64,000 nucleotides of DNA, taken from the NCBI GenBank assembly GCA_907165135.1, contig OU015569.1, forward strand, positions 1,364,001 to 1,428,000, written 5' to 3'. The notes under the pieces were generated by a model. The model worked only from the letters and a program-made list of their open reading frames with translations, did no database searches and was not told the DNA's origin. Position numbers and translations under genes: made by a program. The stretch is from Oikopleura dioica (Eukaryota; Animalia; Chordata). Below are positions 4,407 through 9,372 of this stretch, one piece after another (the first letter of the stretch is position 1; every line of letters starts with the position of its first letter).

Positions 4407-5729
4407 ATGGGTAAGCGCGTCTGCATTGTTGGCTCTGGCAACTGGGGCTCTGCCATTGCGAAACTTGCCGGTTTGAACGCTGCTACAAATCCTCTTTTCG
4501 AGAAAAAGTAAGTCGCTGGCTTTAATCTCCTTTTTTAATATTTTGCTTAAGTGTTAACATGTGGGTCTACGAAGAGATGGTCGAAGGCCGAAAGCTCACT
4601 GAAATTATCAACCAAGATCACGAGAACGTCAAGTACTTGCCCGGTGTCAAGCTTCCAGAAAATGTCATCGCCGTCCCAGAGCTCGTCGACGCTGCAAAAG
4701 ATGCCGACCTCTTTATCTTTGTTATCCCCCATCAGGTACGCGTCCGAGCCGCTTTCAAATACAAACTTGCAATTCTAGTTCATCGCCCGAACCGTTGCAA
4801 CCATGAAGGGTCACGTGAAAGAAGGGGCCGCCGCCATTTCTCTCATCAAGGGTATCAACATTACCGACAGCGGACTTGGCCTCATCTCTGACGAGATTCG
4901 AGAAGCGTTGGGAATCGATGTCTCTGTTCTTATGGGCGCCAACATCGCCAACGAAGTAGCCAGAGATCAGTTCTGCGAGTCGACTGTCGGAGGATTCGGT
5001 GAAAACGCCAAGGTTCTTATAAAATCAATCACTTCCAGTTCTAACGCCATTCTAGACCTTCAAGGCTCTTTTCCAGCGACCAACCTTCCGAGTCTCCATT
5101 TCCGAGGATCCCAAGACTGTTGAGCTTTGCGGTGCTCTGAAGAACATTGTTGCCTGTGGAGCTGGCTTCTGTGATGGCCTCGGTCTTGGCGACAACACCA
5201 AAGCTGCTATCATCCGGTAGGGAGACAGTTTGAAGTAGCCCCTTATTCTCTCGCGTTCTAGTCTCGGTTTGATGGAGATGATGGACTTCTGCAAGGTCTT
5301 CTTGTCCGAAGGAGAAGTAAAGAACCAAACATTCATGGAGTCCTGCGGCGTCGCCGATCTCATCACCACTTGCTACGGTGGCCGAAATCGAAAAGTTTCC
5401 GAGGCCTTTGCCAAAACCGGCAAGTCCCTTGATGAACTTGAGAAAGAAATGCTCAACGGTCAGAAACTCCAGGGATGTGTTTTAAAAACATTAGCTCAAG
5501 TATCGAGTAATGTTTATTTCATGCCTATTTTCAATAGTTGATAACGTTTTCAAAACGCGTTGAAAAGGGACCCGAAACAGCTCGAGAACTTCAGGGAGTG
5601 CTTACGAACAAGAAGATCTCGCCCGAGCGATTTCCATTGTTCACTTCTGTGTTCAAGTGCTGCTACGAAGGCGCACCCGTCGCCGACTTCCTCAAGGCTC
5701 TTGAGAACCACCCTGCCCATGGAAATTAA
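4407..5729 (+). CDS. GPD1: Glycerol-3-phosphate dehydrogenase [NAD+], cytosolic
   Basis: [58 protein letters not shown]. Last intron is GG-AG (5473-5567). Confidence 0.95.
5473..5567 (+). other. Non-canonical GG-AG intron
   Basis: Removal restores GPD1 QKLQ-GP. The nearest GT donor (5477) gives a stop or the wrong frame with the nearby acceptors. Confidence 0.75.
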
Positions 5730-6187: not shown

Positions 6188-8533
6188 ATGAGCTGGTTGG
6201 GTATCGCAGAAGGGGAGCGGATAAGAGCATGTGCGCCGATGGTCGATTTGAGCTGGCTCCCTTTTCGGAAACGGTCGGAAAAAAATAATTTTTCAATTGA
6301 AGTTTTTCGAACTTGATTCTCACCGCGATCATAGTCGTCTCGTTCACTCCAAGGGCGTTAATGTTAGTTGGACGCCAATGCACAACGCTCATTTGATAGT
6401 AAACGATTCTAAGTATCGGAAAAATGTTCTAGCAGATCTAAGAGATAGTCCCAGGAGAGTGGTTTGTCACTGCAGGTGCGAGATCCTGAGACATTATTGT
6501 TGGTGATCTTGAGAGAGACCAGTTTTCGTTCAAATGGCCGCTAATGACGTGGATTTATTTGTCGAAGCGATAAGGATTGTAAAGGACTGTTGCGATGCCG
6601 TAGATTTGAATCTCGGCTGTCCGCAGCATATTGCACGACGCGGTGGCTACGGCGCGTTCATGATGCTAGGGTCGTGGGATCTCATTGCCCGCTTGATAGA
6701 GGCAGGAAGTCGAATTCATCCAATAACAGTGAAAATCCGCGTCTTTGAGGAGATCGAGAAGACGGTTTCTTATGCTAAGGGAAGAGTGTGAATGTGAAAC
6801 CAATTTATTTTTTCATTGTTGAGTCATTGGTAATTACCAGTGATGAATTACCACAAGAATTTATAGACCAAAAATTCCTAACGAATTAATAATTTTCCTT
6901 TCTTTTTCCCATTTTCCTTTTGCAATCATTTAAAAGATGATCGAAGCCGCTGGCGCAAGGTTTGTTTTTTTTCAGTTTGAGTCGTTCTAAATTTAGTTTT
7001 AGCATCTTGACTGTACATGGGAGAACTATCGAACAGAAGAAAGAATTGACAGGATTAGCGAGTTGGGAACATATCAAGGGTACTGTTCAAATGAACAATG
7101 TTAAAAATCGGCTTGTATCTCTTGCGCCTCTTGATGACATTTTAGCTGTGAAGAACAAGCTCACCATCCCCGTCGTCTTGAATGGAAATATTCGATACTT
7201 CTCAGATGTCGAAGAAGCTTTTAGAGAAACTGGAGTCGACGGAGTTATGTCTGCCGAGGGCCTCCTCTCAAATCCCGGTATCTTTCTGCCAACAGTCGGT
7301 GAGTTTCACAAATTATATCTCAATGAGAGATGTTACTTGACTCTTTAGCAAAGATTGATCAGATTGTCGACGAGTTCATCGCCTTGTTTGAAGAAAACTG
7401 CGGGGGAGCGTCTTTGTCCAGCTTGAAGACATTTTTATTTCGAGTTTGGAAATCGGTGCTTCGAGAGAATCCGCAGCTAACATTCGATTTGGAAGCTTGC
7501 TCCTCGTTGGAACAATTCAAAGAGTGGAATGCTAGGGCGGGAAAGGAGTTTCCTACAGAGTGTGGACCTTTCATCCGCAAAGAAAGGGCTCAAGCGACGC
7601 TTACGGCAGATGAACGCCGGGTCAGAAACGAAAAGCGGCATCTAGAGCAAGAAGCGAAACGGAAGGAGCAAAAGAAACGAAAGAGACAAGAACGAAGGGA
7701 ACGAAAAAAGGAGGAAGGCGAGAAAGAAAAGGACGAGGAACGAGTCTCGAAAAAAGAGCGAATTCAGGAAGAGAAAAACAGACTCAACGCAGCTTCTCGA
7801 GAGTTGAGCCTAACAATTGCAATCGATCTGTCGTACTCGAAATCAATGAAGATGAAGGAAACGAAGAAAATGGCCGGCCAGCTTGCGAGGATACATGGCT
7901 CCAACCGGAAGAGCTCCAAGCCGGCGAAAATCTTTCTTACTTCCTTCTCTTCAGATGATTTGCTGTACAAAGAATGTGAGCGACAACACGAGGGATTTAG
8001 CAATTTCGGCTTTGAAATTGAATCTGAGAGGCATCAAGCTTGTTTTTCGAAGGAAGAACTTGTTGTTTTGTCCCCAGATGCGGATGAGCCGTTGGAAAGT
8101 GTAGAGTTGGGAAAAGTCTATGTCATAGGAGGTACGTTCACAGGAGAAGGGCATTTTTAAACCATTATTAGGCGATCTGGATGAATCATACAGCAATAAG
8201 CGCTCGCTGAACGACGCTCTGTCCCACCAACTTGTTTGTAAGCGACTTCCGATCGAGGAACACTTGGAAAGAGCGGACTCACATGCTAAGAATAGGCAAA
8301 GAGCGAAAAATACCATCCTATCTCCGAATCAGGAACGGCGAGAAATATCGTTGGCGAGTTGAGCGCACTAATCGCAATAATAATAACCGCGCTACAGATT
8401 TATAGCCCGTCGCGACTTTCTCACCGATTTGTTGAAGGTGTTTGATATTCTCTCTTTATACAACGAGACAAGTGATTGGAAGAAGGCGCTCATCACCCAC
8501 GTTCCTCTGAAAAAGGGCTTCAAATTGTGCTGA
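6188..8533 (+). CDS. Fusion protein: DUS1-like tRNA dihydrouridine synthase plus TRMT10-family SPOUT tRNA m1R9 methyltransferase
   Basis: N-half: [37 protein letters not shown]-half: IAIDLS, LSPDA, VYVIGG.LDE, KRLPI, NQVFDIL. The DUS helical domain, charged linker and start of the SPOUT domain lie in one stop-free exon (7349-8131). Confidence 0.85.
8333..8437 (+). other. Non-canonical GA-AG intron
   Basis: Removing CAG|GAACGG...TTGAAG|GTG restores the conserved TRMT10 motif NQ-VFDIL. In-frame stops lie inside. Confidence 0.85.
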
Positions 8534-8580
8534 AACTCTATTTAGCTAGAATGACAAATAGTAATCGTTCTTTTTTTAGA

Positions 8581-9372
8581 ATGTTTGATGGAACACCATG
8601 CCATACGCTTTACATCAAAAACCTCAATGACAAAATCAAGAAAATCGAACTTACAAGACAGCTGTATTCAATTTTCTCTTCATATGGCATGGTAAAAACA
8701 ACTTTATCTTACTCAATAACTAGTTTTTTTTTAGGTACTAGACATCATGGTTTCGAGGGCTCCGAAATTGAGGGGACAAGCTTTTGTCACTTTCAAGGAT
8801 ATCTCAGATGCGGCGAACGCGATGAAGAGAATGCAGGTAAATGCTCGATTTATTGAGAACGTCTTTTGACTTTATATTTGAAGGGTTTTCCATTCTACGA
8901 AAAGCCGATGATGGTTTCGTATGCTAAAAGAGAATCGCACGTGATCACGCAAGCGAAGAAATACGTTCCTCCAAAGGACGAGCGCACTCTCGCCAAAGGT
9001 TGATACTCATTTTCACTTCTTTTTTTAACTGATATTTTCAGAGACAAACGCAAAAGTTGCCGCCAAAAAGAAAACGGGTGGAGAAGAGGAGGAACCAGCG
9101 GCGACGATCTATGTCGAAAATCTCCCCGACGAGGCCAACGAGAGTATGCTCAATCTCCTTTTCTCCCAATTTCCTGGCTTCAAGAAGAGCCGACCTATCC
9201 CTGCAGGAGGAAAAGGTAACGAGTCGTTACTAACGACAGCCATCAATTGAAAAATATTTCAGCTTTTGTCGAGTTTGCGGACCCCGGCGCTGCAACTAGC
9301 GCCAAAGATGCTCTCCAAGGATTCAAAGTCACTCCAGATCGTCCCATCAAGCTCTCCTTTGCGAAGAACTAA
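8581..9372 (+). CDS. SNRPA: U1A/U2B''(SNF)-family snRNP protein, two RRMs; RRM1 specificity loop is U1A-like
   Basis: [33 protein letters not shown] (U1A: ILDILVSRSLKMRGQAF), GFPFYEKPM, second RRM IYVENLP...LFSQFPGFK...IKLSFAK. Confidence 0.85.

What the first reader, a model, noticed from the sequence alone, without database searches (positions are those of the whole stretch)
6188..8533. DUS1L-TRMT10 fusion: two tRNA-modifying enzymes in one polypeptide
Seen: a complete Dus TIM-barrel plus helical domain ([12 protein letters not shown]...LFRVWKSVL) runs without a stop through a Lys/Glu/Arg-rich linker into a complete TRMT10 SPOUT domain. The junction lies inside one exon (7349-8131), so it is not a splicing-model artefact. 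No in-frame Met precedes the first TRMT10 strand (IAIDLS). The vertebrate DUS1L C-terminal Cys-rich tail is absent. Established: Dus1 makes D16/D17 and Trm10 methylates purine 9, which are neighbouring sites in the tRNA core; in model eukaryotes they are separate genes. Inference: a bifunctional tRNA-core modification enzyme, plausibly formed by collapse of two operon neighbours. I know of no described example.
Basis: partly seen in the sequence, partly recalled or inferred. Interest (0 to 1): 0.8.

Follow-up and report, generated by a model that had tools for sequence, protein, structure and literature searches.

The report
Dus1–TRMT10B fusion tRNA enzyme gene
One gene here does encode a tRNA dihydrouridine synthase joined to a position-9 tRNA methyltransferase in a single protein, but the same fusion also occurs in choanoflagellates, spiders, worms and a sea anemone, so it is not an invention of this animal.

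Summary
A nine-exon gene (6188-8533, + strand) encodes a 588-aa protein. It has a complete Dus1-type dihydrouridine synthase at the N-terminus and a complete Trm10-type SPOUT methyltransferase at the C-terminus, joined inside exon 7 (7349-8131) with no stop or in-frame Met between them.

A sister-lineage locus (about 71% nucleotide identity, synonymous sites saturated) keeps the same frame through the junction. Its protein-level conservation there equals that of the two domains.

The "linker" is not neutral. It is the Dus1 C-terminal motif followed within about six residues by the Trm10 family's own basic N-terminal segment. The zinc-module tail of DUS1L is replaced.

The same architecture occurs in six choanoflagellates, a sea anemone, a nemertean, annelids, many chelicerates, a centipede and Tara Oceans plankton (there as one intronless ORF). 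The methyltransferase half falls in the TRMT10B clade. The Dus half is Dus1-like, and several species also carry a separate DUS1L.

In this window all catalytic residues of both domains are intact. In choanoflagellates the Dus catalytic cysteine is lost.

I found no paper describing the fusion. RNA evidence for this exact lineage could not be obtained.

The parts
6188..8533 (+). Whole coding region of the fusion gene: 9 exons, 588 codons plus a TGA stop.
   Evidence: Model and translation. Collinear with L001 and L002.
6188..7542 (+). Dus1-type dihydrouridine synthase, TIM barrel plus helical domain, aa 1-307 (exons 1-6 and the start of exon 7). It contains the TPM motif (6372-6380), catalytic Cys105 in NLGCP (6609-6623), K143 (6732-6734), and H171 and R173 (7016-7024).
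   Evidence: Pfam Dus hits. Domain limits. The window keeps 60 of 77 columns that are at least 92% conserved, including all catalytic and FMN-site residues.
7349..8131 (+). Exon 7, a single exon that carries the end of the Dus helical domain, the junction and the first half of the SPOUT domain.
   Evidence: ORF 7330-8160. GT-AG introns on both sides.
7549..7584 (+). Degenerate Dus1 C-terminal motif ([12 protein letters not shown], aa 310-321). It corresponds to LPxWxCQPY(V/I)RP of canonical DUS1L.
   Evidence: Comparison of tails. Coordinates.
7600..7710 (+). Trm10-family basic N-terminal segment (aa 327-363). It is equivalent to the LSKxxxRKxxR... stretch of stand-alone TRMT10A, TRMT10B and yeast Trm10.
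   Evidence: The phmmer alignment to full-length fission-yeast Trm10 runs through it. N-termini of stand-alone TRMT10A and TRMT10B. Against L002, pN is 0.18 and pS is 0.80.
7807..8530 (+). Trm10-type SPOUT methyltransferase domain, aa 396-588 (rest of exon 7, then exons 8 and 9). The GG-x-x-D motif with Asp507 lies at 8128-8182 and spans intron 7.
   Evidence: Pfam tRNA_m1G_MT. PDB Trm10, TRMT10A and TRMT10C hits. The window keeps 18 of 21 columns that are at least 85% conserved. TRMT10B-clade placement.
6780..6936 (+). Non-canonical GG-AG intron (intron 3).
   Evidence: The join YAK|MIEAAGA is continuous in the L001 ORF.
8333..8437 (+). Non-canonical GA-AG intron (intron 8).
   Evidence: The join ...SPNQ|VFDIL... 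is continuous in the L001 ORF. L002 reads SPNQ followed by a GA donor.
7846..7872 (+). First in-frame Met codons after the Dus domain (M409, M411, M417). They lie downstream of SPOUT strand 1, so they are unsuitable as the start of a functional stand-alone Trm10.
8581..8691 (+). First exon of the next gene, a U1A/U2B''-like RRM protein. It starts 47 nt after the fusion gene's stop, behind a T-rich tract ending in AG, which is operon-like spacing.
   Evidence: Sequence. RRM_1 hit in its second exon. L001 has the same gene order.

Best explanation
The locus is one gene making one 588-aa protein. The protein is a Dus1-type FMN-dependent tRNA dihydrouridine synthase, joined through the Trm10 family's own basic N-terminal segment to a TRMT10B-type SAM-dependent SPOUT methyltransferase.

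It belongs to a gene family with this same architecture that is spread across choanoflagellates and animals. The family is paralogous to canonical DUS1L and orthologous, in its methyltransferase half, to vertebrate TRMT10B.

Inferred mechanism: the two domains work on the same tRNA core. The Dus domain reduces U16/U17 in the D-loop, and the SPOUT domain N1-methylates purine 9. The shared basic segment holds the tRNA, so one binding event can serve both reactions, probably one after the other.

Shown: the ORF, the domains, the intact catalytic residues, conservation of the frame, and the distribution of the architecture. Inferred: the enzymatic activities, the target positions and any hand-over between the domains.
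For: - One ORF with both domains.
- No in-frame Met between M226 and M409.
- Sister-lineage locus L002/L003: same frame through the junction. It has one extra 66-nt GT-AG intron there that holds the only stops.
- Window versus L002 across exon 7: synonymous differences are saturated (pS 0.78-0.89). Non-synonymous differences are low and even (pN 0.11-0.18) in the Dus end, the junction, the basic segment and the SPOUT part.
- The nearest outside relatives, P0002 and P0157, are single intronless ORFs of 593 and 617 aa on Tara Oceans metagenome contigs.
- At least 14 clusters among the best 150 representatives carry both domains. Several choanoflagellate ones are complete ORFs on transcript contigs.
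- Trm10 trees put every fusion with vertebrate TRMT10B and apart from TRMT10A and fungal Trm10. The quick tree gives SH-aLRT 94 and the careful tree 92/92.
- The Dus tree places the window inside holozoan Dus1.
- Catalytic residues of both domains are intact here.
- Function of relatives: Dus1p acts on U16/U17 (PMC3674756). Human TRMT10B makes m1A9 on tRNA-Asp (PMC7293042).
Against: - There is no RNA evidence for this exact lineage. The only RNA runs offered belong to a diverged lineage, and nothing mapped on 7547-8092.
- In the more distant locus L001, the Dus and Trm10 frames can be joined only by a non-canonical G(A/C/G)-AG intron. The Dus frame there ends in a TGA followed by an AT-rich spacer and an AG, which also resembles an intercistronic region.
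- The backbone of the Dus tree is unresolved. The window's clade does not group with the other fusion clades in the free tree.
- No activity was measured. In choanoflagellates and a mite the fused Dus domain has lost its catalytic residues, so Dus catalysis is dispensable for the family.
Confidence: 0.72

Rival explanations
1. Independent, lineage-restricted fusion. In the ancestor of this animal, L001 and the Tara relatives, a canonical-type DUS1L (or a recent copy of it) fused to a neighbouring TRMT10B. This would be separate from the fusions of protostomes and choanoflagellates.
For: In the quick Dus tree the window, L001 and Tara clade sits with cnidarian canonical DUS1L, not with the other fusions. 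In the careful tree the three fusion clades are separate branches of a polytomy. The junction motif of the Tara proteins is the canonical CQPYVRP and the window's CGPFIR resembles it, whereas protostome fusions have CHSRPR.
Against: The AU test does not reject one clade of all fused Dus domains (p = 0.205). The window's branch is long and was flagged for long-branch effects. All fusions have the same domain order and the same break points: after the Dus1 motif, before the Trm10 basic segment, with the zinc module lost. RNA reads of the sister lineage include a second, canonical-type Dus1 message (GCPQMIAKRGHYGA, a motif found only in unfused DUS1L in my set). This suggests the fused Dus is an extra paralogue here, as in spiders, Nymphon, Actinia and Salpingoeca rosetta.
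Confidence: 0.25
2. The fusion is real, but the Dus half is only a tRNA-binding module with no reductase activity, so the protein is a TRMT10B with a built-in D-arm reader.
For: All six choanoflagellate fusions have Trp in place of the catalytic Cys and have lost the Lys, His and Asn positions. The mite protein is also degenerate. The Trm10 residues are intact everywhere.
Against: In the window, the Tara proteins, the nemertean, the annelid, the spiders, the scorpion and the sea spider, every checked catalytic and FMN-site residue is kept. The window keeps 60 of 77 near-invariant Dus columns. pN in the Dus part is as low as in the SPOUT part.
Confidence: 0.15
3. Two cistrons. A spliced-leader acceptor or internal start in the linker yields separate Dus and Trm10 mRNAs and proteins.
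For: The genome has operon-like spacing: the next gene starts 47 nt after the stop. The L001 junction looks like an intercistronic spacer.
Against: There is no in-frame Met until after SPOUT strand 1. The conserved basic Trm10 segment lies upstream of any Met in the window, L002 and L001. The frame and the protein sequence of the junction are conserved at saturated synonymous divergence. Relatives have one intronless ORF.
Confidence: 0.06
4. Assembly or sequencing artefact that falsely joins two frames.
For: None found.
Against: Two independent Logan assemblies of the sister lineage and one ENA assembly show the same arrangement. Many unrelated genomes and transcriptomes do too.
Confidence: 0.02

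Closest known systems
Predicted Dus-Trm10 fusion proteins already in public databases. Examples: Tubulanus polymorphus XP_074654537.1 (657 aa), Salpingoeca rosetta PTSG_08201 / XP_004991225.1 (699 aa), Argiope, Nephila, Stegodyphus, Centruroides, Nymphon and Lamellibrachia models, and Tara Oceans ORFs P0002 and P0157.
   Same: Same domain order. Same break points: Dus1 C-terminal motif, then the Trm10 basic segment. Same loss of the DUS1L zinc module. TRMT10B-type SPOUT domain.
   Different: The window's linker is the shortest seen, about 77 aa between the domain envelopes against 81-238. Sequence identity to them is only about 35%. The choanoflagellate members have a catalytically dead Dus domain and one carries an added KH domain. 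All carry automatic names only, and I found no paper on them.
Canonical DUS1L / yeast Dus1 (tRNA dihydrouridine 16/17 synthase).
   Same: TIM barrel plus helical domain, TPM motif, catalytic Cys, Lys, His and Arg, and the C-terminal WxCQPYxRP-type motif. Placed within holozoan Dus1.
   Different: Canonical DUS1L continues with LSKNKQKK...NPHK and a Cys-rich zinc module. Here that tail is replaced by a whole Trm10 enzyme.
Vertebrate TRMT10B (m1A9 methyltransferase of tRNA-Asp, PMC7293042).
   Same: The nearest stand-alone relatives of the window's SPOUT half. The opossum TRMT10B is the third-best hit, at 40% identity. They fall in the same clade in both trees and have the same basic N-terminal segment.
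   Different: Vertebrate TRMT10B has an unrelated 100-280-aa N-terminus and no Dus domain. Base specificity (A9 or G9) of the fused form is unknown.
Other Dus enzymes with appended RNA-binding or other domains, such as animal Dus2 with a dsRBD and Dus3 with zinc fingers (PMC3674756, PMC9775027).
   Same: A Dus core extended at the C-terminus by a module that helps handle tRNA.
   Different: There the appended modules are binding domains. Here it is a second catalytic enzyme. Neither survey lists a SPOUT or Trm10 partner.

Membership tests
Dus family (PF01207), Dus1 subfamily | FMN-binding TIM barrel with catalytic Cys in the NxGCP motif, a conserved Lys, and His/Arg of HGRT | tested here: met
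   C105, K143, H171, R173, N204 and N206 are present. 60 of 77 near-invariant columns are kept. Pfam Dus E-values are 6e-17 and 6e-12 on single exons.
Dus family (PF01207), Dus1 subfamily | C-terminal helical domain after the barrel | tested here: met
   The alignment to the Tubulanus Dus region covers query positions 18-299. The exon-7 start aligns to Dus ORFs of L002 and L003.
Dus family (PF01207), Dus1 subfamily | Subfamily markers: the (T/S)PM motif of Dus1/Dus4 (PMC3674756) and tree placement among Dus1 proteins | tested here: met
   TPM at aa 42-44. The window sits inside the holozoan Dus1 clade, rooted on fungal Dus1 (99/95*). No Dus2, Dus3 or Dus4 outgroups were in the tree, so exclusion of Dus4 rests on the best hits all being DUS1L-named.
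Dus family (PF01207), Dus1 subfamily | Reduces U16/U17 of tRNA | not testable with these tools
   Needs an enzyme assay or complementation.
Trm10 / TRMT10 SPOUT methyltransferases (PF01746, PF27710), TRMT10B branch | SPOUT domain with the conserved GGxxD loop (catalytic Asp) and SAM-pocket residues | tested here: met
   G503, G504, D507, P530 and N556 are kept. 18 of 21 conserved columns are kept. Pfam E-value 9e-11 on the exon-7 part alone. PDB Trm10, TRMT10A and TRMT10C hits.
Trm10 / TRMT10 SPOUT methyltransferases (PF01746, PF27710), TRMT10B branch | Basic N-terminal segment preceding the SPOUT domain | tested here: met
   aa 327-363. It aligns with the N-terminal region of full-length fission-yeast Trm10 and matches the N-termini of TRMT10A and TRMT10B.
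Trm10 / TRMT10 SPOUT methyltransferases (PF01746, PF27710), TRMT10B branch | Groups with TRMT10B rather than with TRMT10A or fungal Trm10 | tested here: met
   The quick tree gives SH-aLRT 94 for the 88-row clade (labels). The careful tree gives 92/92 for the split. Support is good but not maximal. No labelled TRMT10C was included.
Trm10 / TRMT10 SPOUT methyltransferases (PF01746, PF27710), TRMT10B branch | N1-methylates purine 9, and which base (A or G) | not testable with these tools
   Needs an assay. Human TRMT10B is A9-specific (PMC7293042).
Dus-Trm10 fusion gene family (database-only, unnamed) | Both domains in one ORF in the order Dus then Trm10, joined after the Dus1 C-terminal motif and before the Trm10 basic segment | tested here: met
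Dus-Trm10 fusion gene family (database-only, unnamed) | Common descent of the window's fusion with the protostome and choanoflagellate fusions | tested here: inconclusive
   The free Dus tree leaves three separate fusion clades in a polytomy. The AU test for one clade gives p = 0.205. The Trm10 tree puts all of them in the TRMT10B clade without resolving the order.
Two-cistron operon with spliced-leader trans-splicing | A stop ending the upstream ORF, and an acceptor plus start codon for the downstream ORF | tested here: not met
   There is no stop in the frame from 7349 to 8131 and no Met before aa 409. RNA confirmation for this lineage was not obtainable.

The most novel reading that the evidence does not exclude
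TRMT10B was born fused. In the common ancestor of choanoflagellates and animals, a Dus1 duplicate lost its zinc module and was joined to a Trm10 duplicate. The stand-alone TRMT10B of vertebrates is then a remnant that lost its Dus half after the split from tunicates. In this reading the Dus half is TRMT10B's original tRNA D-loop reader. It stays catalytic in some lineages (this one, spiders, nemerteans, annelids), giving a true two-reaction enzyme, and has become a pseudoenzyme in others (choanoflagellates, a mite). That would tie D16/17 formation and purine-9 methylation into one modification circuit.
Probability: 0.4. Interest if true: 0.72.

Novelty: new variant of a known kind. Interest (0 to 1): 0.55.

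Why it matters
A natural fusion is a strong hint that two activities belong together. Dihydrouridine at 16/17 and N1-methylation at position 9 sit close together in the tRNA core. No link between their enzymes has been reported in the papers I could search.

TRMT10B is the least understood member of its family. In humans it has a single known substrate (PMC7293042). Many invertebrate and choanoflagellate TRMT10B orthologues carry a Dus1-like domain that is active-looking in some and dead in others. This gives a concrete, testable idea of how the enzyme finds its tRNA.

This tunicate-like genome is the closest relative of vertebrates in which I saw the fused form. Its linker is very short, which makes it a compact candidate for biochemical and structural work.

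The fusion is already visible in public protein databases under automatic names. What is new is recognising and interpreting it, not the sequence.

Tried and rejected
- RNA-seq check. The only RNA runs offered carry the same species label but belong to a diverged lineage, with most reads under 90% alike. Only conserved patches mapped and nothing mapped on 7547-8092, so the linker could not be tested. From the loose ends I could take three things. The sister lineage's orthologue is transcribed. Its exon 6/7 and 7/8 splices are used. A second, canonical-type Dus1 message is present.
- Exact look-up of the window's ORF in the assembly index: not on record. The organism was therefore not named by any tool. 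'Larvacean-like' rests on tiny introns, G(A/G)-AG introns and operon-like spacing.
- The word-index protein search with the Tara fusion's Trm10 part found few fusions. Searches with the Tubulanus protein were more productive.
- The ESM Atlas has no cluster of 50 or more members with both domains.
- The scan's earlier notes hold nothing on Dus or Trm10 in this genome.
- A canonical GT-AG join of the two frames in L001 does not exist.
- Structure prediction was not run. The window's full protein is spliced and has no reference, and relative domain placement without error estimates would add little.
- The full-length window protein was never sent to a remote search, for the same reason. Exon 7 and database relatives were used instead.
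Full report
**What is in the window**

The + strand between 6188 and 8533 holds nine exons separated by introns of 40-157 nt. Six introns are GT-AG, one is GG-AG (6780-6936) and one is GA-AG (8333-8437). Joined, the exons give a 588-codon ORF with no stop.

Pfam finds Dus in exons 3 and 6 and the Trm10 model (tRNA_m1G_MT) in the second half of exon 7. Exon 7 (7349-8131) runs without interruption from the last helices of the Dus helical domain into the first half of the SPOUT domain.

After M226 the next in-frame Met codons are M409, M411 and M417. These lie behind the first SPOUT strand at aa 397-405.

The two non-canonical splice joins are not guesswork. In a related locus (L001) the same residues are read straight through in uninterrupted ORFs.

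**Is the junction translated?**

Two Logan assemblies (L002, L003) carry an orthologue with about 71% nucleotide identity. In L002 the frame is the same from the Dus end to the SPOUT domain. The one exception is a 66-nt GT-AG intron (L002:1836-1901), which holds the only two stops. Removing it restores a sequence that aligns residue for residue with the window.

Across exon 7, the proportion of synonymous differences is 0.78-0.89, which is saturated. The non-synonymous proportion is 0.11-0.18. It is no higher in the junction (0.11) or the basic segment (0.18) than in the Dus end (0.16) or the SPOUT part (0.15). An untranslated spacer would not have kept its frame and 72% amino-acid identity at that distance.

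The closest relatives outside this group, P0002 and P0157, are single intronless ORFs of 593 and 617 aa on Tara Oceans metagenome contigs.

**RNA evidence is weak**

The RNA runs offered belong to the L002-type lineage. Their loose ends match L002 rather than the window. Only conserved patches mapped, and nothing mapped on 7547-8092.

The loose ends do show three things. The orthologue is transcribed. The introns equivalent to 7299-7348 and 8132-8171 are spliced out. Reads that start in 7366-7452 run on for a median of about 240 further letters, but only the first 30 are reported, so continuity across the junction is suggested and not shown.

**Anatomy of the 'linker'**

Canonical DUS1L proteins end their helical domain with a motif of the form LPxWxCQPY(V/I)RP. 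They continue with an acidic stretch, then LSKNKQKK...NPHK, then a Cys-rich zinc module.

Stand-alone TRMT10A, TRMT10B and yeast Trm10 begin their conserved part with (L/I/C)SKxxxRKxxR followed by a run of Lys/Arg/Glu.

The window has a worn copy of the Dus1 motif ([12 protein letters not shown], aa 310-321). About six residues later comes the Trm10 basic segment (aa 327-363). The two proteins are therefore joined almost end to start, and the DUS1L zinc module is replaced by a whole Trm10. The distance between domain envelopes is 77 aa here, against 81-238 aa in other fusions.

**The architecture is widespread**

An exhaustive HMMER search with exon 7 gave 838 hits. Among the best 150 cluster representatives, at least 14 carry both domains in the same order. 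Named sources are:

- **Choanoflagellates:** Salpingoeca rosetta, S. infusionum, Didymoeca costata (with an extra KH domain), Choanoeca flexa, Barroeca monosierra and Hartaetosiga gracilis. Several are complete ORFs on transcript contigs.
- **Cnidarian:** the sea anemone Actinia tenebrosa.
- **Nemertean:** Tubulanus polymorphus.
- **Annelids:** the tubeworm Lamellibrachia. The Ridgeia 'TRMT10B' model still carries the Dus1 motif at its N-terminus, so it is a truncated model of a fusion.
- **Chelicerates:** many spiders, a scorpion, a sea spider and a mite.
- **Myriapod:** a centipede.

Salpingoeca rosetta, Actinia, Araneus and Nymphon also have a separate canonical DUS1L.

In the sister lineage of this window, RNA reads covering the NLGCPQ motif continue with MIAKRGHYGA. 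That is the canonical DUS1L form, not the fused gene's [10 protein letters not shown], and the flanks differ from L002. A second Dus1-type message is therefore probably present there too. I cannot exclude that those reads come from food or contaminant organisms.

**Which subfamilies**

In a 148-row quick tree and a 51-row careful tree of the SPOUT domain, every fusion falls with vertebrate TRMT10B. They lie apart from insect and fish TRMT10A and fungal Trm10 (SH-aLRT 94, and 92/92). The window pairs with L001 (100/98) and then with the Tara proteins (98/94).

In the Dus tree, rooted on fungal Dus1, all fused domains lie inside holozoan Dus1. The backbone, however, is a polytomy. There are three fusion clades: window plus L001 plus Tara, protostomes, and choanoflagellates. 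They are not united in the free tree.

Forcing them together costs 12.3 log-likelihood units, with AU p = 0.205. One origin is allowed but not shown. The identical order and break points favour one origin. The canonical-looking CQPYxR motif of the Tara proteins, echoed in worn form by the window's CGPFIR and contrasting with CHSRPR in protostomes, is the best argument for a separate event.

**Are both halves enzymes?**

The window keeps 60 of 77 Dus columns that are at least 92% conserved. These include the catalytic Cys105, K143, H171, R173 and the Asn/Gln residues around the flavin site. It keeps 18 of 21 Trm10 columns that are at least 85% conserved, including G503, G504 and D507. The same holds for the Tara, nemertean, annelid, spider, scorpion and sea-spider proteins.

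All six choanoflagellate fusions have Trp at the catalytic Cys and have lost most of the other Dus residues. The mite protein is also degenerate. The Trm10 residues are intact in every member.

The constant part of the family is therefore the methyltransferase. The Dus half is either a second enzyme or, where a separate Dus1 covers that job, a non-catalytic tRNA-binding module. For this window the bifunctional reading is the better one.

**Mechanism (inferred)**

Dus1p reduces U16/U17 (PMC3674756). Human TRMT10B methylates N1 of A9 in tRNA-Asp (PMC7293042). Both sites lie in the D-arm and core region.

The tethered domains, with the basic segment between them, would hold one tRNA for two reactions. 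These are probably sequential, because both enzyme types must distort the D-arm. That last point comes from general knowledge of Dus-tRNA and TRMT10C-tRNA structures and was not tested here.

**Literature**

Searches combining Dus/Dus1 with Trm10/TRMT10B and fusion terms found no description. The TRMT10A/B characterisation paper, the Dus family evolution paper and the Dus2 fusion survey do not mention it. Subscription-only literature was not searchable.

**Verdict**

The proposed recent operon-collapse origin is not supported. The gene is one more, unusually compact, member of a family with this architecture that spans choanoflagellates and animals. That family sits unremarked in the databases. 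It is interesting for tRNA-modification biology but is not unique to this genome.

Noticed in passing
window 8534-8691 and onward; L001:2207-2709: The next gene is a U1A/U2B''-like RRM protein. It starts 47 nt after the fusion gene's stop, behind a T-rich tract ending in AG. The same Dus-Trm10 then RRM order is kept in the distant relative L001. This looks like a conserved operon-like pair.
   Followed up: partly
window 5269-5729: The upstream neighbour on the same strand ends here. It is the C-terminal part of an NAD-dependent glycerol-3-phosphate dehydrogenase (Pfam NAD_Gly3P_dh_C). A 458-nt gap separates it from the fusion gene's ATG.
   Followed up: partly
window 7080-7145 and 6516-6779; L002:1113-1147 and L002:1836-1901: Intron positions differ between the two lineages. 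L002 lacks the window's intron 5. It has extra introns inside the equivalents of exon 3 and of the junction in exon 7. L001 lacks the first four introns altogether. Intron turnover is rapid while the frame is strictly kept.
   Followed up: partly
window 6780-6936 and 8333-8437: Two non-canonical introns (GG-AG and GA-AG) in one gene. The GA donor after ...SPNQ appears to be shared with L002.
   Followed up: partly
proteins P0253, P0299, P0280, P0285, P0204, P0203 versus P0003, P0146 and the yeast Trm10 alignment: The tail of canonical DUS1L (LSKNKQKKxLRNP..., also seen in a chytrid Dus1) resembles the start of the Trm10 basic segment (LSKxxxKKLxK...). It could be a shared short tRNA-binding or nuclear-import motif. 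It could also have eased recombination between the two genes. This is unexplained.
   Followed up: no
proteins P0050, P0051, P0052, P0091, P0098, P0112, P0060: The Dus domain of all six choanoflagellate fusions and of the mite Galendromus has lost the catalytic Cys (Trp or Phe instead) and other active-site residues, while the Trm10 domain is intact. This is a likely Dus pseudoenzyme. Didymoeca also has a KH domain between the halves.
   Followed up: partly
window 6591-6626 (reads of runs X1, X4-X6): Many RNA reads match only this 36-nt stretch. Their flanks encode a canonical DUS1L-type sequence different from both the window and L002. This is evidence for a second, more highly expressed Dus1-type gene in the sampled organism, or in something sampled with it.
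   Followed up: partly
protein P0028 (Ridgeia piscesae KAK2176579.1): This protein is annotated as a 368-aa TRMT10B, but its N-terminus carries the Dus1 C-terminal motif. It is nearly identical in its Trm10 part to the Lamellibrachia fusion, so it is probably a truncated gene model of a fusion.
   Followed up: no
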